Part shown: positions 25,427 through 63,529 of the stretch, piece after piece | Position numbering within the stretch: the stretch's first letter is position 1 | Layout: every line of letters starts with the position of its first letter | NCBI GenBank assembly: GCA_002269645.1 | Contig: NIVC01000511.1 | Span: 156,023 to 220,022, forward strand | DNA length: 64,000 bases | From: Macrostomum lignano | Lineage: Eukaryota | Direction: 5' to 3' | Notes under the pieces: model-generated | Told to the model about the DNA's origin: nothing | The model's database searches: none | What the model saw: only the letters and a program-made list of their open reading frames with translations | Made by a program: the position numbers and the translations under genes

Positions 25427-28400
25427 TTAAAAGTCAAGCGGTTTGGCTAGCGAGTCCAGCAGATTCCTGTGCGTCAGCTCTATGCCCCGGCCGCTGCCGC
25501 TGGCGCCGCCCGTTGAAGCGGCTGTCTCCAGCAGCTCGGACTCGATGTCCGCCTTGGATTTGCCCTCGAACGTTGCCAAGCGTCGCACTAGAATTTCCCG
25601 ATCTCTTAGCAGATTCGCGATTCGCTCGCGCATGTGGCGCATGTCCCGGTTGAACTGGCAGCTCTTGGCCCTGATGGCCTGGTCTACGCTCTCCAGCTGT
25701 GAGCTGATGCTGCACTCCAGGTCTGTCTGCACAGCGATATTGTTCAATAGCATCATTGCGGCTGCGTCCTGCTGCTGTTGCTGATGATGCTGATGGTCGT
25801 GCAGTCGGGTCTCCTCCGAGTGATCGGCTCCCAGCGACATGAGCAGACTGTCCCTGTCGCTGGTGTACTTTTGAAGCCTGCGCGAGCGATTTATGTTGAT
25901 GGAAATTTTGAAATTATGCGATTCACGCTGTAGCGATGGTATGGCTTATGCGAAAGCATGGCTTAAGTATTGGAACTTCTTTAAGGCAGCTAAGTTTAAT
26001 TTTTTGGGTTCCAATTATATCCAACAGCCCCAAAAGCCAATCGAGAAGAAATCTCAACTTAATCAGAGAATGGCATCAAGTCTCACAGCTTAATCAGAGA
26101 AAGGCATCAAGTCTCACAGCTTAATCAGAGAAAGGCATCAAGTCTCACAGCTTAATCAGAGAATGGCACTGAAATCTCACAGCTTGATGGGGAATGGCAC
26201 TGAAATCTCACAGCTTAATCAGAGAATGGCATCAAGTCTCACAGCTTAATCAGAGAATGGCACTGAAATCTCACAGCTTAGTCAGAGAATGGCACTGAAA
26301 TCTCACAGCTTAGTCAGAGAATGGCACTGAAATCTCACAGCTTAGTCAGAGAATGGCACTGAAATCTCACAGCTTAGTCAGAGAATGGCACTGAAATCTC
26401 ACAGCTTAGTCAGAGAATGGCACTGAAATCTCACAGCTTAGTCAGAGAATGGCACTGAAATCTCACAGCTTAGTCAGAGAATGGCACTGAAATCTCACAG
26501 CTTAGTCAGAGAATGGCACTGAAATCTCACAGCTTAGTCAGAGAATGGCATCGAACCTCAGCTGCATGAGTGTCACACAGAAGTCCCACAGTTTAGTGAT
26601 AGAATTGCACCAAAATGTGGGCCACAAATTCGCACCCAAGTCTCGGCACGTGTCTTTAATTGCACTTATCATCTCGAATTATCCGGCCAAAGCAGCCGCT
26701 TTGGCTTTGACTTGGCCGAAAGAAAATTTCTAGCCGCGGCGCTGAACTGCTCGAAACTTACAGATTTCAATTTTCCCCTCGAACTTCCCTTCTCCCCCTG
26801 TCCAGTACTTTCCCAGCTTCGCAGTCGCAGCCTCATCAGAGACCATTAGGAAACCGGGCAATCCAATTCCACGAATCGCTACTGGGAGCTTGCTGAATGT
26901 GGGATTTACTTCCTCAGCAGCCTGGCTGAAAAGTCAATTCCACTTTTATTTGTGTTTTTCTGTGACAAAATTCTAGCCAGGGTTTTTGAACCGTTTTTTA
27001 TTTCACATTAGTGATGTTTCGCTGACAAATTAGTATCTATATACGTAAATGGGAAGAGGGAAGGGAGGGGAGATGAGAAACGGAGGCATAGGAGATGGGT
27101 GAGAAATAGTAGATGAGAAACGGGGGGAGCAATGTGTAGAAGGAGGGAGAGATTTGTAGAAGGGAGAGGAGGTGTGTAGAAGAAGAGAGAAGAGATTTGC
27201 AGAAGGGGAGAGATGTGTAGAAGAAGGAAGAGAAGATGTGCAGAAGAAGGGAGAAGAGATGTGCAGAAGAAGGGAGAGGAGATGTGCAGAAGAAGGGAGA
27301 AGAGATGTGCAGAACAAGGGAGAGGAGATGTGCAGAACAAGGGAGAGATGTGTAGAAGAAGGGAGAGGAGATGTGCAGAACAAGGGAGAGATGTGTAGAA
27401 GAAGGGAGAGGAGATGTGCAGAACAAGGGAGAGGAGATGTGCAGAACAAGGGAGAGGAGATGTGCAGAAGAAGGGAGAGGAGATGTGCCGAACAAGGGAG
27501 AGGGGATGTGCAGAACAAGGGAGAGATGTGCAGAAGAAGGGAGAGTAGATGTGCAGAAGGGAGAGGAGATGTGCAGAACAAGGGAGAGATGTGTAGAAGA
27601 AGGGAGAGGAGATATGCAGAAGGGAGAAGATGTGTAGAGGGAGGGAGAGGAGATGTGAGATGGGGAGAGAGTTGACGGTAAGAGAAGTGGTTAAGTATGA
27701 GAAGTGGAGAAAGTGATAAATGAGACATCCAAGAGGTTACAGTGCAGGGCATAACAGAGGCATAAGAGACGAAGTGTAGAGAGGCTGCAGAGGTATCGAT
27801 ATGCTTTGCAGTGTAGTGTTTGGAAAGCAGCAGCTCCTGAACATAAGAGTAGAAATTCTCTGACTCTGAAGAGGCCCATCAATGGCCAAGTTGCACTCGC
27901 CTAGCTGGCGCTGCCCGTCAACTTGACAGGCTATAATTCGAAAGAAAACACATTGCTGTCACAACAACTGCAGCCACTCACCTGAGCGCCACGGGCAGCG
28001 CGTCGCGATTGCACCGCCGCCTCTCCTGCGCCTCCCGGTAGCGGACCAGGTGGCGGTAGACCCTCTGCAAGGCGTTTGGGGAAAGAGTTGCTAGGGCCCT
28101 GGCCATTCGGGGAAAACTAGCTCGAGAACTAACTCATATACACTTGTGCCAAGAAGGGAGCAGAAATCACCCTGGCAGAGTTCCCTAATGGAATCGCCTA
28201 ATGGAATCATCTAATAGAATTTTCTAGTGTAACCCCCATTTGGAATTTCCCTAGTAAAATCCCCTAGTGGAACCCCCTTGTAGAACCCCCTAGTGGAACC
28301 CCCTTGTAGAATCCCCTAGTGGAGCCCCCTAGTGGAGCCCCCTTGTAGAACCCCCTAGTGGAACCCCCTTGTAGAATCCCCTAGTGGAGCCCCCTAGTGG

Positions 28401-31400
28401 AGCCCCCTTGTAGAACCCCCTAGTGGAACCCCCTTGTAGAATCCCCTAGTGGAGCCCCCTAGTGGAGCCCCCTTGTAGAACCCCCTAGTGGAACCCCCCT
28501 TGTAGAATCCCCTAGTGGAACCCCCTAGTGGAGCCCCCTTGTAGAATCCCCTAGTGGAACCCCCTTGTAGAACCCCCTAGTGGAACCCCCTTGTAGAATC
28601 CCCTAGTGGAACCCCCTAGTGGAGCCCCCTTGTAGAACCCCCTAGTGGAACCCCCTTGTAGAATCCCCTAGTGGAGCCCCCTAGTGGAGCCCCCTTGTAG
28701 AACCCCCTAGTGGAACCCCCTTGTAGAATCCCCTAGTGGAGCCCCCTAGTGGAGCCCCCTTGTAGAACCCCCTAGTGGAACCCCCCTTGTAGAATCCCCT
28801 AGTGGAGCCCCCTAGTGGAGCCCCCTTGTAGAACCCCCTAGTGGAACCCCCTTGTAGAATCCCCTAGTGGAGCCCCTAGTGGAGCCCCCTTGTAGAACCC
28901 CCTAGTGGAACCCCCCTTGTAGAATCCCCTAGTGGAACCCCCTAGTGGAGCCCCCTTGTAGAATCCCCTAGTGGAACCCCCTTGTAGAACCCCCTAGTGG
29001 AACCCCCTTGTAGAATCCCCTAGTGGAACCCCCTAGTGGAGCCCCCTTGTAGAACCCCCTAGTGGAACCCCCTTGTAGAATCCCCTAGTGGAACCCCCTA
29101 GTGGAGCCCCCTTGTAGAACCCCCTAGTGGAACCCCCTTGTAGAATCCCCTAGTGGAACCCCCTAGTGGAGCCCCCTTGTAGAATCCCTAGTGGAACCCC
29201 CTTGTAGAACCCCCTAGTGGAACCCCCCTTGTAGAATCCCCTAGTGGAACCCCCTAGTGGAGCCCCCTTGTAGAATCCCCTAGTGGAACCGTTTAGTGGA
29301 ACCCGCTAGTGTAACCCGCTAGTGAAACCCCCTTGTAGAATCCCGGCCCTAGTGGAACGCCCTTGTAGAATCCCGGCCCTAGTGGAACGCCCTTGTAGAA
29401 TCCCGGCCCTAGTGGAACCGTTTAGTGGAACCCCCTAGTGGAATCCCCCTTGTAGAACCCTCTACTGGAATTCCACGGAATCCCCCTAGCGGAATTCCCC
29501 AAGGGAATCTCCAGAGAGCCGTAGGCAAGATAGACATTTTCATTCCGCGTCTTTGTCATGAAGCTATCTAAATCGTGTTTTTACCGTTTCACCGTGTTTC
29601 AAGAGTCAAATCAAGGGTGTCTGCTTATTTAGAAAAATCCTCTCTACATAAACAATGCTGAGGTTCGAGGATCCACATGGCAGATAGAAGGAAGTACGTG
29701 GTGGAAAATTGTTAACTGAAAAAAATCCGTTGGCTAATAGATCATTTATAGGAAATCGGAATTGAGCTATTAGCTATGAAAATGCATCAGGGATCCGGGG
29801 AAATGTTGAGTTTTATAAGCATTGGCTGAAGTTTTTGGACCGTTTTTCATCGTTTTTTTTGCTTTTCCAAATTCAAATTTTAATTATTAGCTATTCGAGC
29901 CTTGATTTTTCCACATATTCTACAATATCTTAGTTTTTGTATTCATTTTTTATTGTAATATTCTGTTACACTACTACATTACATGTAGCAAAATGTCAGA
30001 AAGTTAAACATAGGGCTGCTACAACACAATTAGATTGCATGCTGTCACAGATATCTTCAATCACCCCTTCGGATCATGCAATTATTTTCCAGGACTGGTC
30101 CGCCAACTTGCTGCTTCACCGGACCATCGCTGCTCAATGTGGCTCTCCCGCTCCCTCTCCCTAGCTCCCTCTCCCTCTCCCGCTCCCTCTCCCTAGCTCC
30201 CTCTCCCGCTCCCTCTCCCTAGCTCCCTCTCCCTAGCTCCCTCTCCCGCTCCCTCTCCCTCTCCCTAGCTCCCTCTTCCTCTCCCGCTCCCTCTCCCTCT
30301 CCCGCTCCCTCTCCCGCTCCCTCTCCCGCTCCCTCTCCCGCTCCCTCTCCCGCTCCCTCTCCCGCTCCCTCTCCCGCTCCCTCTCCCGCTCCCTCTCCCG
30401 CTCCCTCTCCCTCTCCCTCTCCCGCTCCCTCTCCCTCTCCCGCTCCCTCTCCCTCTCCCTCTCCGCTCCCTCTCCCTAGCTCCCTCTTCCTCTCCCGCTC
30501 CCTCTCCCTCTCCCGCTCCCTCTCCCGCTGCCTCTCCCTAGCTCCCTCTCCCGCTCCCTCTCCCACTCCCTCTCCCGCTCCCTTTCCCGCTCCCTCTCCC
30601 TAGCTCCCTCTTCCTCTCCCGCTCCCTCTCCCTCTCCCGCTCCCTCTCCCGCTCCCTCTCCCTAGCTCTCTCTCCCGCTCCCTCTCCCTCTCCCTCTCCC
30701 GCTCCCTCTCCCTAGCTCCCTCTCCCTAGCTCCCTCTCCCGCTCCCTCTCCCTAGCTCCCTCTCCCTCTCCCGCTCCCTCTCCCTAGCTCCCTCTCCCTA
30801 GCTCCCTCTCCCGCTCCCTCTCCCTAGCTCCCTCTCCCTCTCCCGCTCCCGCTCCCTAGCTCCCTCTCCCTAGCTCCCTCTCCCTCTCCCGCTCCCTAGC
30901 TCCCTCTCTCGCTCCCTCTCCCTTTACCTCTCCCTCTCCCTCTCTCGCTCCCTCTCCCTCTCCCTCTCCCGCTCCCTCTCCCTAGCTCCCTCTCCCGCTC
31001 CCTCTCCCTCTCCCGCTCCCTCTCCCTAGCTCCCTCTCCCGCTCCCTCTCCCGCTCCCTCTCCCTCTCCCGCTCCCTAGCTCCCTCTCCCTAGCTCCCTC
31101 TCTCGCTCCTTCTTCCTTTACCTCTCCCTTTCCCTCTCGCTCTCCTTAGCTACCTCTCCATCTCCCTCTCTTTTTTCCTCTCCCTAGTCCCCACCCTCCC
31201 TCTTCCACTCTCTTTCCGTAGCCCTATCTATCGCTCGATTGGTTTATCTCTGACGCATCTAAGAAAATCCACCAACCAAAATAAAATGGATAAAGAAAGT
31301 AAATTTTGACTCCAAATTTGGCAACATCTCCCAACCCCCCCCCCCCAGGGAAAGCGCATGCAAAGTGCTAAATCAGGATGACTCAGAGCTGGCCCTCCAC

Positions 31401-34400
31401 GAACCTGGCTGATTGGCAGGCAGCAGGCGGGGTTCACCCTGACCTTGCGCAGCAGGGGGAACAGGGCAAAGTACAGCAGGAACTCCGCGGCTGCTGTGGC
31501 ACCAGACAGCAGAACTCCGAAGCAGAAGAGCAGCAGCGGGCCCGCGAAGTTGGTGGGCGTGAGGCGGACTTTATTCTGCGGGTGGTTGAGGGGGTGGGTT
31601 CCAGCACATCCCCTCTGTGACTCCAGCACATTCCCTCACCGACTCCAGCACATCCCCTCTGTGACTCCAGCACACTCCCTCTGTGACTCCAGCACATTCC
31701 CTCTGTGACTCCAGCACATTCCCACTGTGACTCCAGCACATTCCCTCACCGATTCCAGCACATCCCCTCTGTGACTCCAGCACATTTTCTCACCGACTCC
31801 AGCACATTCCCTCACTGACTCCAGCACATCCCCTCTGTGACTCCAGCACATTTCCTCACCGACTCCAGCACATCCCCTCACCGACTCCAGCACATCCCCT
31901 CACCGACTCCAGCACATCCCCTCACCGACTCCAACACATTCCCTCTGTGACTCCAGCACACTCCCTCTGTGACTCCAGCACATTCCCTCTGTGACTCCAG
32001 CACATTCCCTCTGTGTCTCCAGCACATTCCCACTGTGACTCCAGCACATTCCCACTGTGATTCCAGCACATTCCCTCACCGACTCCGGCACACTCCCTCT
32101 GTGACTCCAGCACATTCCCTCTGTGACTCCAGCACATTCCCTCACCGACTCCAGCACACTCCCTCTGTGACTCCAGCACATTCCCTCTGTGACTCCAGCA
32201 CATCCCCTCACCGACTCCAGCACATTCTCACTGTGACTCCAGCACATTCTCACTGTGACTCAAGCACATTCCCACTGTAAATCCAACACATTCCCACTGC
32301 AAGCCGAAGCACAGTTACTCGGAAATATTCAAGGTCGAGTTTCAAGCAGCCGGTTGAGCACACAGAAAAGCACCCAGCGGTCCGCCCGGCAGCTGACCAG
32401 CTCCAACTCCTCATAACCTGTCGCTCTCGGTAAACAAAGCAGGGCCCAGCAAACACAGCGACTGCAGCTCAAGTCTCTCCCATGATGCCCGCCAGCCTCG
32501 GGCCCGCGACTGCTGGGCGGCCAACTTCAGGAATTTCGTCGGCCCCTCCCCCCGCCGCCAGCTGTCGAGGCTGCTGAAGAACTTTCAGTTTAATAGCACG
32601 CCAGGAAGAAGAGAGGCCAGCGGACTCGGGAAATATGTGTTTGCCCATCATCCGCCTCTCCTCTGGAACATCCCCCCTGCTCGCTCATTCACTCTCTGTG
32701 CTCGTGTGTGCCTAAGCTAGTAGCTAGCAGAGCCGGGTTCCTGAGCAGAAAACTGACGAACAATATGACTGTTGAAAAATCGATCTATCGAATACCAGAT
32801 TTTTAGCATTGACGCTTTAATTGGAAGAACGGGTGATCTTGTTTCTTAGAAATTCTCTGAAGGCAGGCTTAGCTCAAAAAAATCACTACGGAGACAGGAA
32901 TGGCTCATTTCTTCCGTTTCCTCGTAATAAGGGACTCCATTTTTCGGTTTTACAGGGTGTACAGCAGCCCTGACTTTCTAATGGTCAAGCATCCTCATGG
33001 CTGCGAATCGCACAACAACCCCACCCTCCTGGCAACCACCTGCCGCATCTCACATGTCTAGTAGTTGCAAAGGTCGTGACTGACACATAGCATAGCAACG
33101 CTCTGCACTCACCACGTGAGGTCGCTTGTCCTTTCCCGGCACCACTTTGGTCCACAGATCGATCTTCTGCTTCATCTGGTCGGTGAAATCGTTGGTGCCG
33201 AGCAGGTTGGTGAGGGTGGCGGTCAGGTCCTGGCCTGCCTCTCGCAGCTCCCTGCTGAGTGCGGCGGTGTAGCCAACCCTGCCGAACGGTTTGCCAACCA
33301 ATTCCACATTGTAGGTGTGGTTGACTCGCAGCAGGTATTGCAGCAGCTCAGTGTCGTATAGGAATGCCCCTATGCTGCCTTTTCTGTGGGGTGAAAAATT
33401 GTCACATCTTGACTTGCCTCTCGATTTAGAAAATCGATTACTACACGTGGCATATTGAATAGGTTTTTGAAAAAGTCATTGAAAGTCACAAGGTGTCCAC
33501 TGCGCCGCCCCAAAACACAACCGTTAGAAGCCATTGGAAGTCACAAGGTGTCCACTGCGCCGCCCCAAAACACAACCGTTAGAAGCCATTGAAAGTCACA
33601 AGGTGTCCACTGCGCCGCCCCAAAACACAACCGTTAGAAGCCATTGGAAGTCACAAGGTGTCCACTGCGCCGCCCCAAAACACAACCGTCAAAAGCCATT
33701 GGAAGTCACAAGGTGTCCACTGCGCCACCCCAAAACACAACCGTCAAAAGCCATTGGAAGTCACAAGGTGTCCACTGCGCCGCCCCAAAACACAACCGTC
33801 AAAAGCCATTGGAAGTCACAAGGTGTCCACTGCGCCACCCCAAAACACAACCGTTAGAAGCCATATTGGAGGTGTCCAATGCGCAACCCAAAAGACAGGC
33901 ACTGTATGCCCACTCTCACCCTAGGGCCGCCATGGCCTCCTCAGCGGTGTCAAAGAAGCTGAGGTGCTTCACCAGGTGATGGTAGGTTCTGTTCAGCTCA
34001 ATCGCTGTGCCGCTGCCCCTCACGGTGCCCAAACTGATCTGGCCGCTCTGAATCTGCAAACATTCGGGCAACTGGAGGTCAGAGGCAGTGCAGTGAGTGA
34101 CGCTGCAGTACTATAGTAAGTTAGAGTACAGTATGTAGTTAAACTGCAGTAACATGGATAGCCACTCAACAGTAGATGAAAAGGAAAAGCTTGATTTTTA
34201 TCTGGAACTATCGCTTTTCTCACTTCGAGCAGCATTTGTTATCAAAATAACGCTTTTATACAAACCAGACCAGTAGAATATGATCATTCGCCCACACACT
34301 ATGCCCATTCACCCACGAACTATAACCACTAACCCCACAGACTATGTCCATTCACGCTACATACTATGCCCATTCACCCTACAGACTATGCCCATTCACC

Positions 34401-37400
34401 CACATACTATACCTATTCATCACCCATAAACTATGCCCATTCACCCATAAACTATGCCCATTCACCCATAGACTATACCCATTCACCCATAGACTATACC
34501 CATTCACCCATAAACTATGCCCATTCACCCATAAACTATGCCCATTCACCCATAGACTATACCCATTCACCCATAGACTATGCCCATTCACCCATAGACT
34601 ATACCCATTCACCCATAGACTATGCCCATTCACCCATAGACTATACCTATTCACCCATAGACTATACCCATTCATCTACAGACTACGCCCATTCACCGAG
34701 ACTATACCCATTCATCTACAGACTACGCCCATTCACCGAGACTATACCCACTAACCCCACCACAGACTATGCCCATTCACCCACAGACTATGCCCAGTCA
34801 CCCACACACTATGCCCATTCACCCTACAGACTATGCCCATTCACCCACAGACTTTGCCCATTCACCCTACAGACTATGCCCATTCACCCTACAGACTATG
34901 CCCATTCACCCTACAGACTTTGCCCATTCACCCTACAGACTATGCCCATTCACCCTACAGACTATGCCCATTCACCCTACAGACTATGCCCATTCACCCT
35001 ACAGACTATGCCCATTCACCCTACAGACTATGCCCATTCACCCTACAGACTATGCCCATTCACCCTACAGACTATGCCCATTCACCCTACAGACTATGCC
35101 CATTCACCCTACAGACTATGCCCATTCACCCACAGATTGTATTTAGCAACAGCAATTTATTCTGCTGATAAATTTCTGGCAAAATCCTCGTGTGAGAGCA
35201 GGTGGCGGGGGCAAAATGAAGGAATGAAAATTCACGCATTCACTTTCCTGATTTCAGATTAAAGCGAGGTTCCAAAAATGGGTATTAATTATTAAAATTG
35301 TTTAAAAAGGCAATGCGGCGCAGAACAATGCAAGAAAATTTTCTGCACTGCAAATTGTGTTGCCGATTTAAAAAATCAATAATTTGCCAATTTTATTATC
35401 CGAAATTTTGAAATACTAACTTAATATGCGTTTTTTGTTGAGCTTTGCCTCCATGAAAGCTGTCAAATGGGACTGTGTGAGGACCTGCATCCATTTATAG
35501 CTGCTAGATTAGCGAAACACCTCTGGGTTTGCCCGGCTGTCTCCCCTCTCTGTCTCCCCCTCTCTGTCTCCCCCTCTCTGTCTCCCCCTCTCTGTGTCCT
35601 CTCTCTGTCTCCCCCTCTCTGTCTCCCCCTCTCTGTCTCCCCCTCTCTGTCTCCCCCCCTCTGTCTCCCCTCTCTGTCTCCCTCTCTCTCTTCCCCCTCT
35701 CTGTCTCCCCTCTCTGTCTCCCCCTCTCTGTCTCCCCCTCTCTGTCTCCCCCTCTCTGTCTCCCTCTCTCTCTTCCCCTCTCTGTCTCCCTCTCTCTCTT
35801 CCCCCTCTCTGTCTCCCTCTCTCTCTTCCCCCTCTCTGTCTCCCCCCTGTCTCCCCCTCTCTGTCTCCCCCCCTCTGTCTCCCCCCCTCTGTCTCCCTCT
35901 CTCTCTTCCCCCTCTCTGTCTCCCTCTCTCTCTTCCCCCTCTCTGTCTCCCTCTCTCTCTCCCCCCCCCTCTGTCTCCCCCTCTCTGTCTCCCTCTCTCT
36001 CTTCCCCCTCTCTGTCTCCCTCTCTCTCTTCCCCCTCTCTGTCTCCCTCTCTCTCTTCCCCCTCTCTGTCTCCCCCTCTCTGTCTCCCTCTCTCTCTTCC
36101 CCTCTCTGTCTCCCCCCCCCCTGTCTCCCCTACTCTGTCTCCCCCTCTCTGTCTGCCCCTCTCTGTCTCCCTCTCTCTCTTCCCCCTCTCTGTCTCCCCC
36201 TCTCTATCTCCCTCTCTCTCTCCCCCCTCTCTGTCTCCCCCCTCTCTCTTCCCCTCTCTGTCTCCCCCTCTCTGTCTCCCCCCCTCTGTCTCCCCCTCTC
36301 TGTCTCCCCCTCTCTGTCTCCCTCTCTCTCTTCCCCCTCTCTGTCTCCCCCCTCTGTCTCCCCCTCTCTGTCTCCCCCTCTCTGTCTCCCCTCTCTGTCT
36401 CCCCTCTCTGTCTCCCCTCCTCTCTGTCTCCCCTCTCTGTCTCCCCTCTCTGTCTCCCCCCCTCTGTCTCCCCCTCTCTGTCTCCCCATCTCTGTCTCCC
36501 CCTCTCTGTCTCCCCCTCTCTGTCTCCCCCTCTCTGTCTCCCCCTCTCTGTCTCCCCCTCTCTGTCTCCCCTTCTGTCTGTCTCTGTGTGTCTCTCCCTC
36601 TTTCCCTCTCCCTCTGTCTCACCCATCTGCATCTAACCTCCCTAAGACAGGGCTGCCAAACCGGGACAGAAAATTTCTCCTAAATATGATGCTACGAGTC
36701 ATATGCAAGCAGAACACAAACACTGGTAAATGTTAGGAATGCAAAATTTTCAAAGTAAATTCTCTTCACTTCGCGACAGGATACTCTCTTGAGGCTGAGA
36801 ATCGGAAAGAGGAGGAACAGAAGCCCGAGCTGTGAGGCTTGGAAGGCTGCAAATCTAATTAATTCGCAGACAGCGGCACGGATTTGATTGCAGGGCACAG
36901 CTGGCTGCTAAACTGGGGTTTTGAGAAAGTTTTGTTCAGCCAAAAATCGGCGCAATTAATTTGAATTGTGCTGCAGAATGAGTTGAAGGAATTGGTGAAA
37001 TTTAAAGCATTTCATTAGTACACTTTTTACTATAAAATTTTACTGCTGTGCCTTTCGGATACGCAGTCTCGTGAGCATGAAAATGCTATTTGATTAACAA
37101 ATATGAAGAAAAAGAACAAATCGGAAAATAATTGACATTTTCGATGACTGCTAGAGTGACAGATTCGTCGAGTGACAGTTTTGTAGATTGACAGATTCGT
37201 AAGAGTGACAGATTTTTAGATTGACAGATTCGTAGAGTGACAGATTCGTAGAGTGACAGATTTGTAGAGTGACAGATTCGTAGAGTGACATTTGTAGAGT
37301 GACATATTCGTAGAGTGACAGACTCGTAGTGTGACAGATTCGTAGAGTGACAGACTCATAGAGTGACAGACTTGTAGAGTGACAGGCGACTCACCCGGCT

Positions 37401-40400
37401 GTCGTGGATGCCGACAATGTCAGACGCTTCGCCTTCGCCGACCATGAAGGCGGCGAGGTTGGCGGTGTAGCTGGCAATGAAGACGAGGCAGAACATGGCG
37501 TAGATATTCAGTAGGAAGCGGGCGCTCCAGCACTTTGGCGACTTAGTCTGCACCGTGTGCGAGAACAGCACAGACCAGGTGAGGGTCAGAGCGCTTGGGA
37601 AGCTGAACACCCGGCGCCGATTGCGGCCGTAGGGCGTCAGGCCGAACGGGCTGAGCCACTCGTAGATGACGGCGGCAACGGCGGCCACATGGACGGTGGC
37701 CAGGATGCACATCCACATGAACAGGTCGAAGGGATAGAGGAAGCCAAATCTGGTCGCCCGGCCGCTGAGCTTCTCGGTTCGGTTAACCACGATTGACACC
37801 GAGGTCAGCAGGTAAGGGTCTGAGGTGAGAAAGTCGCGGCGCCAGTTTGCGTTGCTGACCACCTGAAACGTCGCGCGACTTTAATGTTATTTGAGGTGTA
37901 ATTTAACATCACGTGACTTGAATTGTCTTCAGGTGTGTACTTAAACCTCATGGGGTTTGATTCGTTTTTGAGTGTTATCTTGGAGCATGTACTTAAAAGT
38001 CACGTGACTTGATTTGTCTTGGAATATGTACTTTAACATCACGTGGCTTGATTTGTCTTGGAGCATGTACTTTAACATCAGGTGACTTGATTTATCTTGG
38101 AGTGTGTACCTTAACATCACGTGACTTGATTTATCTTGGAGTGTGTACTTTAACATCACGTGACTTGATTTACTCGTATCTTGTAGTGTGTACTTTAACC
38201 TCACTTGACTTGTCTGTGAGATTTAGTTCTTTTTAGCATCTTGGGACTAAATGCTTATAGTAGGTGTACTTCAAGATCGCGCGACGCAATACGTCAGGTA
38301 TCACGTGAGAGAAAGGAATTTTATAACAGCAGCTTTATTACACAATTAAAACTGTGCTATTCATTTTTCTGCTGAGCTGACTTTGACCGAGAGAGAGATA
38401 GTAAATGTTTCAGCAAAAAGCGATTGTCTATAAAATTTCAGGCAGGAAACTTACGGAAGCCCCGAGGCCTTACTGGGATAAGTTGAGGGATGATAATTTC
38501 AAGAATTTGCTGCCTCATCCTCATCTTGCATGGCGTCCTCCGAGCTGAGGCGAAAGGCAATTTAGCTTGAGTCGGAAACTGCAGCTGTACCTGGGTGTTT
38601 AGAAGGACTCCTATCGCCTCATCTGCCGTTATGACTGTGGGATAGGCAAGATTCTTCGCCTTGGAAAAAACACCCCAGGCCGGACAACTCTTTTTCTGGT
38701 CTGTAAGGTCACCCCGGGCCGGAAAGGCAGGAAGAGCTGCCGCGCGGTCTTTTAGCTAAATATTTCGAGCGTGCTAATCTTGTCGAGTTCGAGTGTCTTA
38801 GTATTGATTCATGTTTATTTAGCGAACTTTAGCTTCAAGCTGCCGGATGGTTGGCAGAGTTGTTCTTGACTGATTGATATCCTTATAGCAGCAGATATAT
38901 TATTTTAGTAGCTTATTGGGTGAGACAGGTTAAACTTCTAGCTTATGCAGAGCCTTTCCTGTCCCATTAGCTCTGATCGAAGAGTAGCTAACAGAATGAC
39001 ACTGACCACTGTCATGTCATAGAAGATAGTGCTGGCCAGGCCCAAGTGAGGAGTAAATACGATTCTGTAGTCTATGGCCTGGCCCAAGTGAGGAGTAAAT
39101 ACGATTCTGTAGTCTATGGCCTGGTCCAAGTGAGGAGTAAATACGATTCTGTAGTCTATGGCCTGGCCCATGTGAGTAATAAATACGATTCTGTAGTCTA
39201 TGGCCTGGCCCAAACGATGAATAAATACGATTCTGTAGTCTATGGCCTGGCCCAAGTGAGGAGTAAATACGATTCTGTAGTCTATGGCCTGGCCCAAGTG
39301 AGGAGTAAATACGATTCTGTAGTCTATGGCCTGGCCCAAACGATGAATAAATACGATTCTGTAGTCTATGGCCTGGCCCAAGTGAGGAGTAAATACGATT
39401 CTGTAGTCTATTGCCCGGCCCAAGTGAGTAATAATGACGATTCTGTAGTCTATGGCCTGGCCCAAGTAAGGAGTAAATACGATTCTGTAGTCTATGGCCT
39501 GGCCCAAACGATGAATAAATACGATTCTGTAGTCTATCGCCCGGCCCAAGTGAGTAATAATGACGATTCTGTAGTCTATGGCCTGGCCCAAGTGAGTAAT
39601 AAATACGATTCTGTAGTCTATGGCCAGGCCCAAGTGAGTAATAAATACGATTCAAGTAAGCCCAATCAAGTATGCGGAGCTGTATATATATACTGTAGAC
39701 TAGGAGGAAGCCTTCCTGTCCAGATGCTTGCTAGAGAGGGGGTCCATGGTTTAGGCTAACAACTTGTTTGTCTATGGCTCGAGCTGACTGGAAAACTTAG
39801 CCAGAGGATTAAATGAGACAAAAGCAACGCTGGCCAGATTGAGCTCAGATGTGCAGCCCAGCTTACCCATTTGTCACACCTCGCTATACTGCTGCAGATT
39901 GCTGCACAATATAACTGAGAATGATTGCTTTAACAGAATTATTAATTATAATTATTCCATGCAATTGGCTGCTTCAGAGCTTTCACATTTTCCGTTGCTT
40001 TACGTATAGTAGAGCTATTTAATATTCGAGCTCTCTCTCTCTCTCTCTCTATTCGAGTCGGCCCAACCTTGAATCCTGGCCGGGGGTGGAAAGGAAATGA
40101 AAAGCCACTCCAGAGCGCGTCTTCAGTGAGCGCTCAGGCAATAGAGCTTCTTGGGTGTTGCATAGGGGTGAGCAGATCAAGCTGCTTGAGTCCTGCAGTC
40201 AGTTCGGTCAGAAATTGGCGATGACTGAGATGGAACTGGGAGAGCCATACATAGGAAGCCAATTGAGTAGCTACCCTGACCAATGGATACTCCAACTCAG
40301 TTGGCAGGCAGAAGTTAACATTCCCGTATGAATAATGAAATCAGGGCGCTGATTAAACAATATCCTGGCAGAATTCATGACTAATGGAATATTTTTGATA

Positions 40401-43400
40401 CAGACTGTGGGTAGCTGTGAAGCTTAAACAAATTACTGATCACCTGTAGAATCCTCATGCAGTAAGACAAATTCTTGGCTTCCACGTAAATCTTAAAGCT
40501 GGCTTAAAGCCTGGAGTCCTGATAAAAAACTAGGACTCAAGGACAAGCCTAAAACTCACGGAAACACTTGGTACCCCAGGCCAAACTTTGTTACCTAGGG
40601 ACAAACCTAGAGGTCAAGGACAAACTCAGTAGGTACCCTATGAAAAACCTAGGACCTATTGAAAATGCCTAGAACCCCAGCACAGACTCAGTGCCCCAGC
40701 ACAAACTCAGAGCCACAGCACAAACTCAGTGCCCCAGCACAAACTCAGTGCCTCAGCACAAACTCAGTGCCCCAGCACAAACTCAGTGCCTCAGCACAAA
40801 CTCAGTGCCACAGCACAAACTCAGTGCCACAGCACAAACTCAGAGCCACAGCACAAACTCAGTGCCCCAACACAAACTCAGTGCCACAGCACAAACTCAG
40901 TGCCACAGCACAAACTCAGTACCCCAGCACAAACTCAGAGCCACAGCACAAACTCAGTGCCACAGCACAAACCTTTGACCCGAGAGCAATGTTGGCCCTC
41001 TCGCTTTTGAGCTCCTGCGCCAGGCAGTTGTCCGCGGAGACGCAGCAGCCACCTTTTGGAAAGACGCGCACGTCGGCAACCTGAATGACGGTGGGCAGGT
41101 GGTCGCAGAGCTCCTTCTGCTGTTGGAGTGCCTTCTGACTGAACATCTTCTCGCACTGCAGCTGCACAGGGAACTGGATGCTGAGGTAGATGAAGTCGAT
41201 GGCGATGCCGAAACAGCAGCGCTGCCGCGGCTCCTCGGTGCCGTTCGGACGCAGCAGAGTGCAGGCCATGCCGTGCTTGCACTCCCAGCGCGACTCGCTC
41301 GGCTCGCCGCTAAACTCCTTGATCCGGACCAGCGGGTCCTCCTCGTTGAGGGTGAACACCAGCTCGATGTTCTTCTGCCTGACCTGAACCGCGCCTTGGT
41401 GAGTGCTGGACCAAGTGGCCTCAAATTCCAGAGTAGCGATCCAGCGCAGGCCAGCCATGGGTTGGTCGTACTTCTGCGGCAGTGCCACCCCATGCAGCAG
41501 TTTGCGCAGGTTGTAGAACCCGGTGGGCAGCACCGGCTGCTGCTGCGAGGATCTTGCACTCGCATTGCAGGCAAACTTTGGGCAGCTAAATGCTCTGTGA
41601 AGGGTTATAGTAATAGTATTTTATCGATATGGAAATATGGATTCATCCTAGCAATGTCAGTGCCAGTTGAAATTGATTTTATTCAAGCATAATTTATTCC
41701 ACAAAAAGTGATGATGTTCTATAAATTGGACATTGGTCAACGGTCCCAGAAGAAATTGCGACTGCATTACTGACCTCCTGGCCAGCCACCATCCATCAAA
41801 CAGGATAAATTTGATTAGTGTGCGAGAGTCGCCTTCGCAAGTATCTGCAATGCAAAACCAAAGGACTACTACCCGGTATGTCAGGACGCTACACTTAAAT
41901 ATCGTGTAATTATTTCGAAGGCCGATTTCCACGAAAACATACACTGCGGAGATAGGAAATAATCATTTTTTCGTCACAAAAACAATGATTGCATTTGATC
42001 TGGGATGCTGAAGATTATCACTCTTTTAATTTAGCATGGACAGCATGTTACTCTGATGTTAGTGAAAGTTTTATTTTCATATCGCTTTTTACTTTATTTT
42101 CCTATTATTCTTCTTAATATTGTTTGTATACTGCAAATTTGAATGGGATTGAAATGGAATTACACCCACAATAATGGCTTAAGAGCATTAATGCCTGCAT
42201 GCAACATTTTTATTACAAATATAATTCTTTGTAAAAATGGAGTGTTGCGTCCTGATACACTGGAGTGGTCCTTGAGCGAAACCTTACATAAAGCATTCTT
42301 TGCGTTGCAAATCTCATGGTCCTACCGCTTCCCATTTGAAAGATTTTCCAATCGAAACCTGTTGATTGAACAAATATGATCTTTTATCAGCTTATACTTG
42401 TGCACTAATGCGATCCTGTGACATGTATCTAGTACAGGCTCTCTGAGGCGAAACGCGTGTGTATGGCTCAGTAAAAATATTCAGCCCCGTCCATTTTTGA
42501 CTCATTTCTACTCTGAACCCGAACAGATGCAGGCGAGTCTTTCAACACTCTGTCTCTCTCCTTCCCCAGCTTGTAGCCAGGCGACCAGAACGTGAAGGGG
42601 CCGAACGTGCACAAGAGAGAATTGCTTGACAGTTAGTGATGAAGTGAGACAAGGGGACTAGGATTATGAATCATAATTTATACTGCTAGACTCGTGATAC
42701 TGCCACAGACGTGCAAACTCAACCAGCACCAGCCTCACCTGATGGTGCTCTCATAGTGCTTGCTCAGCAACCGTCGGCAAGTCGCCAAATCCTCCGAGCA
42801 CCTCGCCGGCAGCAGCTGACCTGTCGCCGCCTCCTCCTTCAGCTCCTTCAGCTCCTTCAGCTCCAGCTGCCTCGCCCTGGCATAGGCGATGTGCAGCTGC
42901 TGGGAGCTGGCCATGAACTTCAGCAGCAGCACGGACACCAGGGTGCTGAGCTTACTAATGTGCTTCTTCTGCTCATCGTAGTACTGCTCCTGCTTCTGCT
43001 CGTCAACGTGCGGCCCGAACACGTGTGCCACAGTGCTGGGGCTGCTGCTGAAGTACCTCAGCTGCATCTGGCCGGCGGTCGTCTCGAACATCGCCTCCAT
43101 CGCGGATGACTCCACGAACACGTGCAACCGTTCGTCGGCTGGAATTTTCAGCTGACGTCGAAATGCGTCCAGCGCAGTAGTGGCCAGGTGTGCGGCTCCG
43201 ATGTGGAACAGCACGAACTGCTGCAGCTCCGAGCCGTCCTCCTCATCCTCAGCATCACCTTCTACCCGATCTTCATCCGCCACAGCCTCGGATGAGAACA
43301 GCTTAGCCCGCGTTCGCATGTCAACAACTGGATCTCCAGTGAATGCGCGAACCTGGTGGCTGAACAGGTGTCGCTGCAGGTGTCTGCTAATTAATTGGAA

Positions 43401-45312
43401 ACAGTCGGAGGCCACTATTGCTACGTACTTGTAGACTCGCCTTCTGCTGAGCAGGTAGGCGAGTAGAACGCGGGCATCGTTGCAGGTGTTGTCCTCCACG
43501 GGGACGTATTGGAAGTGCTTTTGCTGCAATTTCAACATTTCATTCAGTGTTATGTTACATAGGATCGTTTGATGACAGAGTTTGCCAAGTGTCCCAGCGT
43601 CCCAGTGTCCCAGTGTCCCAGTGTTTCAGTGTCTCAGTGTCCCAATGTCCCAGTGTCTCAGTGTCCCAGTGTCCCAGTGTCCCAGTGTTTCAGTGTCTCA
43701 GTGTCCCAATGTCCCAGTGTCTCAGTGTCCCAGTGTCCCAGTGTCTCAGTGTCTCAGTGTCCCAGTGTCCCAGTGTCCCAGTGTCCCAGTGTCCCAGTGT
43801 TCCAATGTCTCAGTGTTTCAGTGTCCCAGTGTCCCAGTGTCCCAGTGTCCCAGTGTCCCAGTGTTCCAATGTCTCAGTGTTTCAGTGTCCCAGTGTCCCA
43901 GTGTCCCAGTGTTCCAATGTCCCAGTATCCCAGTGTCCCATGCAGTGTCCCAGTGTCTCAGTGTCCCAGTGTCCCAGTGTCCCAGTGTTTCAGTGTCTCA
44001 GTGTCCCAATGTCCCAGTGTCTCAGTGTCCCAGTGTCCCAGTGTCTCAGTGTCTCAGTGTCCCAGTGTCCCAGTGTCCCAGTGTCCCAGTGTCCCAGTGT
44101 TCCAATGTCTCAGTGTTTCAGTGTCCCAGTGTCCCAGTGTCCCAGTGTCCCAGTGTCCCAGTGTTCCAATGTCTCAGTGTTTCAGTGTCCCAGTGTCCCA
44201 GTGTCCCAGTGTTCCAATGTCCCAGTATCCCAGTGTCCCATGCAGTGTCCCAGTGTCTCAGTGTCCCAATTTCCCAGTGTCCCAGTGTCCCAGTGTCCCA
44301 GTGTTCCAGTGTCTCAGTGTTTCAGTGTCCCAGTGTCCCAGTGTTCCAGTGTCCCAGTATCCCAGTGTCCCAGTATCCCAGTGTCCCATGCAGTGTCCCA
44401 GTGTCTCAGTGTCCCAATGTCCCAGTGTCCCAGTGTTCCAGTGTCTCAGTGTTTCAGTGTCCCAGTGTCCCAGTGTCCCAGTGTCCCAGTGTCCCTGTGT
44501 CTCAGTGTCTCAGTGTCTCAATGTCCCAGTGTCCCAGTGTCCCAGTGTTCCAGTGTCCCAGTGTCCCAGTGTCCCAGTGTCTCAATGTCCCAGTGTCCCA
44601 GTGTCCCAGTGTTCCAGTGTCCCAGTGTCTCAGTGTCTCAGTGTCCCAGTGTCCCAGTGTCCCAGTGTCCCAGTGTCCCAGTGTTCCAGTGTCCCAGTGT
44701 CCCAGTGTCCCAGTGTCTCAGTGTCTCAGTGTCCCAATGTCCAAATGTCCCAGTGTCCCAGTGTCCCAGTGTCCCAGTGTCCCAGTGTCCCAGTGTCCCA
44801 GTGTCTCAGTGTCTCAATGTCTCAATGTTCCAGAATCTAGCTCTAAGATTCCTCACTTCTCTATGAAAATTCAGGAATATATTATGTATAGTGTGAGCAA
44901 AAGTGAAGATTTGCCAATGTCTCACCAGCTCGGCCGAGTTCGGCAAGTCCACCAGCCGGTTGCCAACGCAGACAACGCGAAGTAGATTGCAGGCGAGCAC
45001 CAGCTGAGCGGACATGGTTGGCGACAGCACCGCCACTACAGACTGCGAATCGATGACGCTGACAAGATTAGTGAGCTCGCTGTCCGGCACCAGGACAGAG
45101 TCGGGCTGGAACTCCGCCCCGACCGCGTGCTGCAGATCGCGAACTCGTTTGGTGAGAAACCTGGCGTAGAACTCGGTCCTCTCTGGGGACAGCTGGCGCA
45201 GCTGCGACATGTCCAGCACCATCAGCGTCTTTAGCGACTTCAGCGGCGTCGGCGACTGCTGCTGCGCCTCGAAGGCTTGCAGAAAAAGCACCAGCTGCAC
45301 CAGCAGCCGCAT
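25427..45312 (-). CDS. GRIN3A: Ionotropic glutamate receptor, NMDA type, GluN3-like subunit, 1109 aa; exons 45312-44926, 43523-42739, 41552-40973, 37862-37395, 34053-33920, 33383-33113, 31575-31405, 28064-27982, 25877-25427
   Basis: Exons total 3330 nt in one frame with matched phases and GT-AG sites. Signal peptide, ATD, S1 (RCCFGIAID), [35 protein letters not shown] and [13 protein letters not shown] closely track GluN3A ([48 protein letters not shown]). S2 GTVR/AFLYD/VGKPF, M4 [25 protein letters not shown] and a C-terminal coiled coil also match. Confidence 0.9.
26055..26550. repeat. 31-32 bp minisatellite (GTCAGAGAATGGCACTGAAATCTCACAGCTTA)n, GluN3-like intron 8
   Basis: Direct tandem copies. 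Confidence 0.95.
27130..27660. repeat. Purine-rich minisatellite (GAGATGTGCAGAAGAAGGGAGAG)n, intron 8
   Basis: Direct tandem copies; explains ORFs 27008-27752. Confidence 0.9.
28230..29460. repeat. Compound C-run minisatellite (CCCCCTTGTAGAA / CCCCCTAGTGGAA modules), intron 7
   Basis: Two 13-14 nt modules alternate in higher-order units. Confidence 0.95.
30143..31200. repeat. Polypyrimidine (CTCCCTCTCCCG)n / (CTCCCTCTCCCTAG)n tract, intron 7
   Basis: 12-14 bp units, almost purely C/T on the plus strand. Confidence 0.95.
31595..32300. repeat. 22-bp minisatellite (GACTCCAGCACATTCCCTCTGT)n, intron 6, abutting the M4-exon acceptor
   Basis: Direct tandem copies starting about 20 nt from the acceptor at 31576. 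Confidence 0.95.
33480..33865. repeat. 55-bp minisatellite, about 7 units, filling intron 5
   Basis: TCACAAGGTGTCCACTGCG recurs at 33486, 33541, 33596 and onward. Confidence 0.95.
34295..35135. repeat. 21-22 bp minisatellite (CTATGCCCATTCACCCTACAGA)n, intron 4
   Basis: Direct tandem copies with two subarrays; explains ORF 34366..35262. Confidence 0.95.
35537..36625. repeat. Polypyrimidine (CTCTGTCTCCCCCT)n tract, intron 4
   Basis: About 1.1 kb nearly free of A; explains the overlapping 370-390 aa ORFs. Confidence 0.95.
37150..37385. repeat. 16-bp minisatellite (GTAGAGTGACAGATTC)n abutting the donor of GluN3-like exon 4
   Basis: Copies run to within about 10 nt of the donor at 37394. Confidence 0.9.
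37895..38215. repeat. 39-bp minisatellite (TAACATCACGTGACTTGATTTATCTTGGAGTGTGTACTT)n, intron 3
   Basis: Diverged tandem copies starting about 30 nt from the acceptor at 37863. Confidence 0.85.
39035..39652. repeat. 42-bp minisatellite (GGCCTGGCCCAAGTGAGGAGTAAATACGATTCTGTAGTCTAT)n, intron 3
   Basis: Tandem copies with three recurring variants; explains ORFs 38938..39759. Confidence 0.95.
40675..40972. repeat. 19-bp minisatellite (CACAAACTCAGTGCCACAG)n beginning at the donor of exon 3
   Basis: Direct tandem copies; the terminal unit overlaps the GT at 40972-40971. Confidence 0.95.
43588..44830. repeat. 8-bp microsatellite (CAGTGTCC)n filling GluN3-like intron 1
   Basis: Over 1.2 kb of 8-bp units including an internal duplication of about 300 bp; explains ORFs 43547-44985. 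Confidence 0.97.
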
Positions 45313-45903: not shown

Positions 45904-46693
<790 letters not shown>

Positions 46694-54920: not shown

Positions 54921-55628
54921 CCAAAAGCAGAAAGTACTCGGTCTTTAGCCAAGGTGATGAAAGCAATGAAATTAATTATATTTTGTATAGCTATTGAGGA
55001 TAAAAGGAAATTTTGCGAAACTTCTACAGCAACAAAATAAAATTGACTTCACTGGAGATTTCAGGCAATAAAATAACCAAGTGGAAAGATATGCCTACTA
55101 CATTGAGCTCTCTATCGAACGGGATAAAATAGTAGAAATTGCAAAAATTTCAATAGTAACTAAAAATACGGTTTCTATGCTCAACTAAATGAATTTCTAA
55201 CAATGGATTTTAATGGATTTCTAACACAAATAATGCTATGATACTGTACCAGGAAAGCGGCTACAACTACGGGACTTGTGCTTTACTATGAATTACATCG
55301 GGTTTAGCGCATGCACACAGCGGCTATTCTAATAGCTAGTCTGCTTGAATCAAATTTTCCTTACACTTCGCGCGTTAAAGATGAGAATCTTCCTTCCCTG
55401 GACTACTCTGATTGGTTGAGAGGAACAGGGAGGCTGTTTTATCGATCGATTGCGCGGACTATGAGCATGCAGTTAAGGGTAACGAGAGTCGAGGCTTGCT
55501 AGCTCAGAGTTGTTTCAAATTTAAGCTTTTGGGAGCCGAAACATTGCGATTTACAGCATGATAAACCTCATGTTATTTATATAAAGACGGTTCAGCTGCC
55601 GGCAACAGAAGACTGAAATAATAAATTC

Positions 55629-63396: not shown

Positions 63397-63529
63397 CTGG
63401 GGATTTGAGGGATTTTAGCCGGCGATGAGGCTAGCAAAGTGCCCAGTTGTAAAGTGCAAATCATGATTGAGCCCGATTGGTAAACTCAGAATTTACATAG
63501 CTGAACTCATCTGGCAGCAGCAGCCTAAA

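What the first reader, a model, noticed from the sequence alone, without database searches (positions are those of the whole stretch)
37395..41552. GluN3-like NMDA subunit whose agonist pocket seems to have lost the conserved arginine
Seen: joining exons 3 and 4 gives ...[10 protein letters not shown]|[21 protein letters not shown]. Known: in iGluRs the S1 segment reads like GluN3A [22 protein letters not shown], where the Arg five residues before DF binds the ligand alpha-carboxylate and the preceding S/T binds the amino group. Here that position is Ala or Asn depending on gap placement, the S/T is Val, and the GKYG / W.G.VG loop is replaced by [17 protein letters not shown]. The S2 Asp (AFLYD) and the transmembrane core are well kept, so the frame looks constrained rather than decaying. 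Inference: an invertebrate GluN3-lineage subunit that no longer binds glycine or glutamate canonically, acting as a ligand-independent modulatory subunit or sensing a different ligand.
Basis: partly seen in the sequence, partly recalled or inferred. Interest (0 to 1): 0.78.

Follow-up and report, generated by a model that had tools for sequence, protein, structure and literature searches.

The report
Flatworm GluN3-like subunit without pocket arginine
An intact nine-exon gene of the flatworm Macrostomum lignano encodes a GluN3-type NMDA-receptor subunit with a well-conserved channel core but no agonist-anchoring arginine in its ligand pocket; about a tenth of the GluN3-type sequences I collected show the same loss, so this is a real but only moderately unusual family member.

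Summary
The quoted sequence and the 40973|37862 junction are real. The gene lies on the minus strand. I built a nine-exon model (45312 to 25427) with GT-AG at every intron and one 1123-codon open frame. The window is Macrostomum lignano: UniProt A0A1I8IVW0 is 100% identical over residues 1-753 and uses the same junction.

GluN3 placement holds:
- Best solved-structure match is GluN3A (181 bits, against 116 for GluN2D).
- A neighbour-joining tree puts it inside the GluN3 clade.
- It carries the invertebrate GluN3-type C-terminal NIAVQTD coiled coil.

Four alignment methods put Asn604 at the canonical arginine column and Val599 at the Ser/Thr column. Comparing the secondary structure of two AlphaFold models gives Asn604 or Trp605, not Arg606 or Arg607. 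No hidden S1 exon exists. Two relatives from another sample read straight through this site in unspliced DNA and also lack the arginine.

One correction: S2 is as divergent as S1 (18-26% identity). Only the stretch from before M1 through M3 is well kept (61-66%). The N-terminal 450 residues have no detectable homologue.

About 10% of the GluN3-type sequences collected lack this arginine, so the loss recurs. What it does to function is inferred, not tested. Interest is moderate.

The parts
44926..45312 (-). Exon 1: ATG at 45312, signal peptide [16 protein letters not shown], start of the N-terminal domain
   Evidence: same sequence in public model P0008
42739..43523 (-). Exon 2: bulk of the ~450-residue N-terminal domain, which has no detectable homology to an ATD
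   Evidence: Pfam gave no hit; hhalign probability 0.2%
40973..41594 (-). Exon 3: end of the N-terminal domain plus S1a (Cys quartet C..C..CC, inserted helix, [17 protein letters not shown], ...[10 protein letters not shown])
   Evidence: AlphaFold pLDDT 81-92 except in the insertion
37863..40972 (-). Intron 3 (3110 bp): three private minisatellite arrays and no coding-like S1 segment
37395..37862 (-). Exon 4: S1b ([17 protein letters not shown]), pre-M1, M1, M2 pore loop, M3 SYTANLAAF
37845..37847 (-). Codon AAC = Asn604, at the canonical carboxylate-binding arginine column
   Evidence: DSSP register
37860..37862 (-). Codon GTG = Val599, at the canonical Ser/Thr column (GluN1 T518 / GluN3A Ser)
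37836..37841 (-). Codons CGC CGC = Arg606 and Arg607, two and three residues after the canonical position; candidates for a relocated arginine
   Evidence: P0001 also has Arg one residue before its SF
33920..34053 (-). Exon 5: S2a with [12 protein letters not shown] (Ser768, Gly769, Thr770)
33113..33383 (-). Exon 6: S2b with GAFLYD (Asp809, codon 33355-33353), VGKPF and GY; both cysteines of the S2 disulfide are absent
31405..31575 (-). Exon 7: M4 and ...CLPISQ
27982..28064 (-). Exon 8: RVYRHLV..., equivalent to SQRLHR in relatives; supported by motif and reading phase only
25427..25877 (-). Exon 9: C-terminal NIAVQTD... coiled-coil motif shared with invertebrate GluN3-like proteins, then stop TAA

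Best explanation
This is an intact gene of the flatworm Macrostomum lignano (nine exons, 1123 residues) for a GluN3-class NMDA-receptor subunit. The channel core (pre-M1, M1, pore loop, SYTANLAAF gate), M4 and the invertebrate GluN3-type C-terminal coiled coil are conserved. The whole extracellular part is strongly remodelled. The clamshell is still predicted to fold. In its upper lobe, however, the arginine that anchors the agonist alpha-carboxylate is Asn604, the Ser/Thr that binds the amino group is Val599, and the aromatic GKYG lid loop is replaced. The lower lobe keeps Ser768, Thr770 and Asp809. Most likely mechanism (inferred, not shown): the subunit cannot clamp glycine or D-serine in the canonical way. 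It would then work as an agonist-independent modulatory subunit in heteromers, with gating driven by the ligand-binding partners (GluN1 and/or GluN2), while it contributes its pore loop, its gate and C-terminal interactions. Shown: gene structure, family placement, residue substitutions, predicted fold. Inferred: loss of glycine binding, heteromeric partners, modulatory role.
For: - Gene model: nine exons, all introns GT-AG, a single terminal stop, GC3 0.79.
- The public model A0A1I8IVW0 (Macrostomum lignano) is identical over residues 1-753 and uses the same exon 3/4 junction.
- GluN3A is the best solved-structure match: 181 bits against 116 for GluN2D.
- Neighbour-joining trees place the gene inside the GluN3 clade (bootstrap 99 for the clade, 85 for the sub-clade holding vertebrate GluN3 and named 'NMDA 3A-like' proteins).
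- The stretch from before M1 through M3 is 61-66% identical to invertebrate GluN3-like proteins.
- The C-terminal NIAVQTD coiled-coil exon is present.
- Asn604 sits at the Arg column and Val599 at the Ser/Thr column in four independent alignments.
- The DSSP register of AlphaFold models of this protein and of a canonical Saccoglossus GluN3-like protein gives Asn604 or Trp605 as the Arg equivalent.
- The model folds as an NMDA-receptor LBD plus TMD: pLDDT 83, Foldseek E about 1e-22.
- No canonical S1 exon is hidden anywhere in 31-46 kb.
- Relatives P0001 and P0018 read through the site without an intron and carry Ala and Lys at the Arg column.
- In vertebrate GluN1/GluN3 receptors, glycine binding to GluN3 is what opens the channel (review PMC12005412), so loss of the site should matter.
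Against: - Arg606 and Arg607 sit two and three residues after the canonical position on the same short helix. An Arg just before the [DS]F motif is shared with P0001, so a relocated anchor is not excluded.
- I had no model coordinates, so side-chain geometry was not examined.
- Asp809, Ser768 and Thr770 in the lower lobe are retained. That is not expected if the pocket were completely idle.
- There is no expression evidence here and no functional data. Whether M. lignano has GluN1, GluN2 or a canonical GluN3 was not tested.
- The subfamily grouping rests on three sequences, with 63.5% bootstrap.
Confidence: 0.4

Rival explanations
1. The pocket still works but for a different ligand. The amino-group-binding half is kept (Asp809, Ser768, Thr770) while the carboxylate anchor is gone. 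That fits a ligand with an amine but no alpha-carboxylate, or some other small molecule. On this reading the subunit is a retuned sensor, much as insect IRs were retuned from iGluRs.
For: Asp809, Ser768 and Thr770 are retained while Arg and Ser/Thr in the upper lobe are lost. The clamshell is predicted to fold with high confidence, with pLDDT 93-96 in S2. The whole LBD and the N-terminal domain are remodelled rather than degraded. Two paralogues exist in another sample, which suggests a small radiation.
Against: No ligand can be inferred from sequence. The residues lining the pocket differ among the three subfamily members. In vertebrate iGluRs Asp809 also has a structural and gating role (Seljeset et al., bioRxiv 10.1101/2023.08.03.551817), so keeping it does not prove ligand binding.
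Confidence: 0.25
2. Canonical amino-acid (glycine or D-serine) binding is preserved through a relocated arginine. Arg607, or Arg606, on the lengthened helix D would reach the carboxylate site in place of the lost canonical arginine.
For: WRR lies directly after Asn604. P0001 also has an Arg one residue before its SF motif while lacking the canonical Arg, and P0018 has Lys at the canonical column. Residue i+3 lies on roughly the same face of a helix as residue i (general helix geometry).
Against: Register from either flank of the two AlphaFold models puts the canonical position at 604 or 605, not 606 or 607. An ideal-helix estimate (my own arithmetic) puts the C-alpha of residue i+3 about 8.7 A from the canonical guanidinium carbon, beyond the reach of an Arg side chain. 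P0018 has Met at that position. Val599 also removes the Ser/Thr contact.
Confidence: 0.2
3. A decaying or redundant copy: relaxed selection after the genome duplication in M. lignano is eroding the ligand-binding domain of a gene on its way to becoming a pseudogene.
For: The ATD, S1 and S2 are all very divergent. No expression data are available here.
Against: The 3372-nt frame is uninterrupted across nine exons, with canonical splice sites and GC3 of 0.79. The S1 cysteine quartet, the channel core and the C-terminal motif are conserved. The divergent S1 type is shared with two paralogues in another sample, so it is old, not recent decay.
Confidence: 0.07
4. Gene-model artefact: a missed exon or a wrong splice junction hides a normal TxxR motif.
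For: Intron 3 is 3.1 kb long and full of repeats. The junction rests on prediction only.
Against: A profile search of all six frames over 31-46 kb finds no S1-like piece other than exon 3 itself (E = 0.44). The spliced protein is one residue longer, not shorter, than canonical proteins across this segment. The public model uses the same junction. P0001 and P0018 are contiguous through the site in unspliced DNA.
Confidence: 0.03

Closest known systems
Vertebrate GluN3A/GluN3B (GRIN3A/B), glycine-binding NMDA-receptor subunits
   Same: Best sequence match among solved structures (181 bits). Shares the GluN3 signature YEW.SPFGLTP.GRNR..VFSF.SAL...K.PKCW in M1-M2 and YTANLAA.MVGE after M3. Same LBD plus TMD fold. 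Keeps the S2 Asp.
   Different: The canonical Arg, the Ser and the GKYG lid are lost (Asn604, Val599). The S2 disulfide is lost. The pore-loop site reads Ser-His instead of Gly-Arg (the Gly-Arg assignment is from my knowledge). The N-terminal domain cannot be aligned. LBD identity is only about 23-26%.
Invertebrate 'NMDA 3A-like' proteins (e.g. Saccoglossus kowalevskii XP_002734105.2, Tubulanus polymorphus XP_074641318.1, Branchiostoma XP_078658348.1)
   Same: Same clade in the trees. The stretch from before M1 through M3 is 61-66% identical. Shares the C-terminal NIAVQTD...DLRHMRE coiled-coil motif. Shares the Ser-His pore-loop residues.
   Different: Those proteins keep ...S.N/T..R....DF and the DGKYG / WNG motifs, match Pfam Lig_chan-Glu_bd, and have a recognisable ATD. 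This one does not.
Other GluN3-type sequences lacking the arginine: Symsagittifera roscoffensis XP_063722254.1 (Arg to Leu, Asp to Ala), Tachypleus/Limulus NMDA 3A-like (Arg to Ala/Thr), unnamed P0024, P0190, P0191 and P0145
   Same: Same class and same kind of loss at the same column. About 13 of 112 GluN3-type sequences that cover the site lack the arginine.
   Different: These are independent lineages with different replacement residues. Only P0001 and P0018 share this gene's one-residue-longer S1b and its GS...F.T..Y pattern.
iGluR classes and insect/protostome IRs with degenerate agonist residues (Phi and NMDA-Cnidaria classes in Ramos-Vicente et al. 2018, PMC6307864; tuning IRs, from my knowledge)
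   Same: An iGluR scaffold kept while the Arg or acidic backbone-binding residues are replaced. In that paper 28 of 122 proteins from newly defined groups lack them.
   Different: Those belong to other subfamilies. This case is inside the NMDA3 class, for which that paper reports no such loss in the passages read.

Membership tests
Ionotropic glutamate receptor superfamily | Pore module M1, re-entrant M2 and M3 with the SYTANLAAF gate, then M4 after S2 | tested here: met
   Pfam Lig_chan PF00060, E = 2e-25. SYTANLAAF at residues 729-737. AlphaFold helices and Foldseek matches to NMDA-receptor chains.
Ionotropic glutamate receptor superfamily | Bilobed S1/S2 clamshell ligand-binding domain | tested here: met
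   AlphaFold model with pLDDT 81-96 over most of S1 and S2. Foldseek aligns about 475-500 columns to NMDA-receptor chains. At sequence level Pfam Lig_chan-Glu_bd (PF10613) is not matched.
Ionotropic glutamate receptor superfamily | LIVBP-like amino-terminal domain | tested here: inconclusive
   A signal peptide and about 450 residues lie before S1. There is no Pfam ANF_receptor hit, no hit among 1.8 billion representatives, and hhalign probability is 0.2%. The fold was not modelled.
NMDA3 (GluN3) class | Phylogenetic placement with GluN3 rather than GluN1, GluN2 or the AMPA/kainate/delta/Phi (AKDF) subfamily | tested here: met
   GluN3A scores 181 bits against 116 for GluN2D. Neighbour-joining bootstrap is 99 for the GluN3 clade and 85 for the inner clade. 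Nearest named proteins are 'NMDA 3A-like'. Caveat: distance trees only, and the branch is long.
NMDA3 (GluN3) class | GluN3-type M1-M3 signature (SP[FY]G[LM]TP.GRNR, K.PKCW) | tested here: met
NMDA3 (GluN3) class | Glycine-site residues: S1 Arg (carboxylate), S1 Ser/Thr, aromatic lid in GKYG, S2 Ser, S2 Asp | tested here: not met
   Arg is replaced by Asn604 and Ser/Thr by Val599. The lid loop is replaced, with Phe569 one position off. Ser768 and Asp809 are kept.
NMDA3 (GluN3) class | Obligate assembly with GluN1, and activation by glycine binding to GluN3 | not testable with these tools
   Needs heterologous expression. Mechanism as reviewed in PMC12005412.
Invertebrate GluN3-like group | C-terminal NIAVQTD...(D/N)(L/M)RHMRE coiled-coil motif | tested here: met
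   tblastn matches of the C-terminal regions of P0010, P0011, P0012 and P0015 to 25741-25478, E = 2e-12 to 3e-9.

The most novel reading that the evidence does not exclude
Flatworms (and whatever species DRR639838 is) carry a small radiation of GluN3-derived subunits. Their entire extracellular part, meaning an N-terminal domain with no detectable homologue and a remodelled clamshell without the carboxylate anchor, would have been repurposed. They would sense a non-amino-acid ligand, or act as constitutive ligand-free gating partners. That would be an NMDA-lineage counterpart of the way insect IRs arose from the non-NMDA iGluR lineage.
Probability: 0.15. Interest if true: 0.6.

Novelty: new variant of a known kind. 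Interest (0 to 1): 0.36.

Why it matters
GluN3 subunits are the least understood NMDA-receptor subunits. In vertebrates, glycine binding to GluN3 is what opens GluN1/GluN3 channels. A natural GluN3-class subunit that keeps the channel and the lower lobe but lacks the carboxylate anchor is a ready-made test case. It lets one ask whether agonist binding at GluN3 is ancestral and indispensable, or whether GluN3-type subunits can serve as ligand-free or retuned partners. Macrostomum lignano is a transgenic laboratory model, so knock-down and expression are feasible. The recurrence of the loss (about 10% of the GluN3-type sequences collected) suggests this class tolerates pocket degeneration more than GluN1 and GluN2 do. 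That has not been described for NMDA3 in the papers I could search. The practical value is modest: it corrects a chimeric, truncated public gene model and flags a candidate for electrophysiology.

Tried and rejected
- Hidden or alternative S1 exon. A canonical S1 profile searched with all filters off against all six frames of 31-46 kb found nothing but exon 3 itself at E = 0.44. tblastn with seven homologues found no second copy. Rejected.
- An apparent tblastn extension of P0001 into intron 3 (38078-37863) falls on a 39-bp minisatellite and is spurious.
- My first end for exon 7 (LLRK|gtcagg) was replaced by ...CLPISQ|gttcgt, on homology to the LP.SQ of relatives.
- The source contigs of P0002 and P0003 are anonymous ENA assemblies, so they do not show whether M. 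lignano also has a canonical GluN3.
- A second word-indexed search with the subfamily alignment found no members beyond P0001 and P0018.
- Literature searches for GluN3 in Platyhelminthes, for DRR639838, and for Macrostomum glutamate receptors gave nothing specific.
- Profile comparison of the N-terminal domain with GluN3-like ATDs found no similarity.
- dN/dS against P0001 was not attempted, because about 40% protein identity means synonymous sites are saturated.
- Pairing with the acoel P0020 (bootstrap 89) fell to 21-24% once P0001 and P0018 were added. I treat it as long-branch attraction.


Full report
**Observation**

The feature is a gene on the minus strand. The donor is AAG|gtttgt, the acceptor is tttcag|, and the junction is phase 0.

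**Gene model**

I followed open frames, splice signals and homology outward and obtained nine exons:

| Exon | Coordinates (minus strand) |
|---|---|
| 1 | 45312-44926 |
| 2 | 43523-42739 |
| 3 | 41594-40973 |
| 4 | 37862-37395 |
| 5 | 34053-33920 |
| 6 | 33383-33113 |
| 7 | 31575-31405 |
| 8 | 28064-27982 |
| 9 | 25877-25427 |

Every intron is GT-AG. The 3372-nt frame has a single terminal stop, and GC3 is 0.79. The protein has 1123 residues. In order it carries:
- a signal peptide;
- a ~450-residue N-terminal domain;
- S1;
- M1, the M2 pore loop and M3 (SYTANLAAF at 729-737);
- S2 ([23 protein letters not shown]);
- M4;
- a C-terminal NIAVQTD...MRHMRE coiled-coil motif.

Exon 8, and the direct joining of exon 8 to exon 9, rest on a short motif and on reading phase only.

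**Organism and independent model**

An exhaustive HMMER search returned a protein that is 100% identical to my residues 1-753 in one stretch (P0008). It is UniProt A0A1I8IVW0, 'PBPe domain-containing protein', from Macrostomum lignano. That model uses the same exon 1-4 junctions. It is chimeric, however: its first 289 residues come from the neighbouring SLC13 transporter gene. It is also truncated at ...GIHDS.

**Family placement**

- Against all solved structures the best matches are GluN3A chains (181 bits, E = 2.5e-52). Next come GluN2D (116 bits) and GluN2B/2A.
- The M1-M3 region carries the GluN3-type signature [26 protein letters not shown]...KSPKCW...[13 protein letters not shown]. GluN1 and GluN2 lack it.
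- A neighbour-joining tree of 60 sequences over S1b to M4 puts the protein inside the GluN3 clade. Bootstrap is 99 for the clade and 85 for the inner group that holds vertebrate GluN3A/B.
- Its nearest named relatives are annotated 'NMDA 3A-like' (Saccoglossus, Tubulanus, Branchiostoma, Ptychodera).
- The last exon carries the C-terminal motif shared by those invertebrate proteins.
- An AlphaFold model of residues 460-933 has mean pLDDT 83 and matches NMDA-receptor chains over its whole length.

**The pocket**

Four alignment methods agree: HMMER against GluN3A, MAFFT auto on 65 sequences, MAFFT L-INS-i and alignment to a canonical profile. All of them put Asn604 at the arginine column (GluN3A ...SINTAR) and Val599 at the Ser/Thr column five residues earlier.

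I also modelled a canonical Saccoglossus GluN3-like protein and compared the two secondary-structure strings.
- In the canonical model the arginine is 11 residues after the start of the preceding strand, and is the third residue of a four-residue helix.
- Counting from the strand in the flatworm model gives Asn604. Counting from the helix start gives Trp605.
- From the C-terminal side the offset also gives Trp605.
- Neither count reaches Arg606 or Arg607.

I had no coordinates, so side-chain directions are unknown. The DGKYG lid and the WNG.VG helix start cannot be aligned. There is a ~25-residue insertion and a Cys-rich loop of low confidence, and Phe569 sits one position away from the usual aromatic residue. 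On the S2 side, Ser768, Gly769, Thr770 and Asp809 occupy the canonical columns.

S2 as a whole is not well conserved. Identity to canonical GluN3-like proteins by region is as follows.

| Region | This protein vs canonical | Canonical proteins vs each other |
|---|---|---|
| S1 | 19-30% | 37-48% |
| S2 | 18-26% | 32-55% |
| Before M1 through M3 | 49-66% (61-66% to the invertebrate GluN3-like proteins) | 56-77% |

The N-terminal 450 residues match nothing. Pfam gives no hit. No hit covers them among 1.8 billion representatives. Profile-profile probability against GluN3-like ATDs is 0.2%. The whole extracellular part has therefore diverged, not only the S1 half of the pocket.

**Is it an artefact or decay?**

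No S1-like segment is hidden in intron 3 or anywhere in 31-46 kb. Across S1b the spliced protein is one residue longer than canonical proteins, so nothing is missing.

Two proteins from one anonymous sequencing run (P0001 and P0018, Logan DRR639838) share this divergent S1 type (A.GS, then 18 residues to Y, with F.T). In both, the site lies in one uninterrupted open reading frame on an unspliced contig.
- P0001 has Ala at the arginine column.
- P0018 has Lys at the arginine column.
- They group with the flatworm protein at 63.5% bootstrap.

The S1 cysteine quartet is kept. Together with the intact frame, this argues for an old, maintained variant rather than recent decay.

**How unusual is it?**

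Of the GluN3-type sequences gathered here that cover the site, 99 have the arginine and about 13 do not. Those lacking it include horseshoe crabs (Ala/Thr), the acoel Symsagittifera (Leu, and Ala at the Asp position) and several unnamed sequences (Gln/His). Ramos-Vicente et al. 2018 (PMC6307864) reported that 28 of 122 iGluRs from newly defined groups lack the Arg or acidic pair, especially in the Phi and NMDA-Cnidaria classes. I found no paper on GluN3 in flatworms.

**Mechanism**

In vertebrate GluN1/GluN3 receptors, glycine binding to GluN3 opens the channel, and glycine binding to GluN1 desensitises it (PMC12005412). A GluN3-type subunit without the carboxylate anchor and without the Ser/Thr contact should not bind glycine canonically.

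My preferred reading (0.4) is an agonist-independent modulatory subunit whose partners supply the gating. The rivals are:
- a retuned pocket for a ligand that uses the retained Asp/Ser/Thr but has no alpha-carboxylate (0.25);
- a relocated arginine (Arg607, an Arg also seen just before SF in P0001) that preserves amino-acid binding (0.2);
- decay towards a pseudogene (0.07);
- a gene-model artefact (0.03).

None of these can be settled without coordinates, expression data or electrophysiology.

**Verdict**

The functional inference is plausible but untested. The case is a divergent variant within a known class, one instance of a recurrent loss, in a tractable model flatworm. Interest is moderate.

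Noticed in passing
window 25878-44925 (introns 1 and 3-8 of the gene): Seven of the eight introns (all but intron 2) are dominated by their own distinct minisatellite arrays, often starting within a few bases of a splice site. Examples: 8-bp unit x157 at 43588-44833 (89% of intron 1); 19-bp at 40678-40972, which begins at the exon 3 donor; 42-bp at 39033-39653; 16-bp at 37152-37385; 14-bp at 35537-36615; 55-bp at 33473-33864; 22-bp at 31600-32299; 13-bp at 28249-29470. Intron 2 has none.
   Followed up: partly
window 45904-46693: A perfect (CTA)263 microsatellite, 790 bp at 100% matches, lies about 600 bp upstream of the gene's start codon.
   Followed up: no
window ~55600-63400, minus strand: Exons of an SLC13-type sodium:sulfate/dicarboxylate symporter (Pfam Na_sulph_symp) lie upstream on the same strand. 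The public UniProt model A0A1I8IVW0 fuses the last of these exons to the GluN3-like gene and stops at ...GIHDS. It is therefore chimeric and truncated.
   Followed up: partly
window 41400-45312, minus strand (residues 1-~460): The N-terminal ~450 residues have a signal peptide but no detectable similarity to any ATD or to any other protein. By eye there is a faint LIVBP-like pattern (VVAVLSP..., F.Y.P...A..LL......Y..V.IV.SD). The fold was not modelled.
   Followed up: partly
window 33113-33383, minus strand (exon 6): Both cysteines of the conserved S2 disulfide (GluN3A ...DADC... and ...VVPCGK) are absent together: Tyr in NHTYNV, and no Cys in VVPGK. The nemertean (P0011) and P0015 GluN3-like proteins also lack them.
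   Followed up: partly
L001 and L002 (Logan DRR639838): Two paralogues of the arginine-less GluN3-like type occur in one unidentified sequencing run. Both have S1b to M3 in a single uninterrupted reading frame, without the intron that M. lignano has at GSK|VV.
   Followed up: partly
P0009: A 2907-residue predicted protein consists of 23 tandem copies of a fragment containing FEWLSPYGLHPLGRNRY, that is, a GluN3-type M1-M2 linker exon amplified as a tandem repeat in some genome. It is probably a repeat read as protein.
   Followed up: no
window 22189-23019, plus strand: A 276-codon GC-rich open frame ([28 protein letters not shown]...) with no Pfam match lies downstream of the gene.
   Followed up: no
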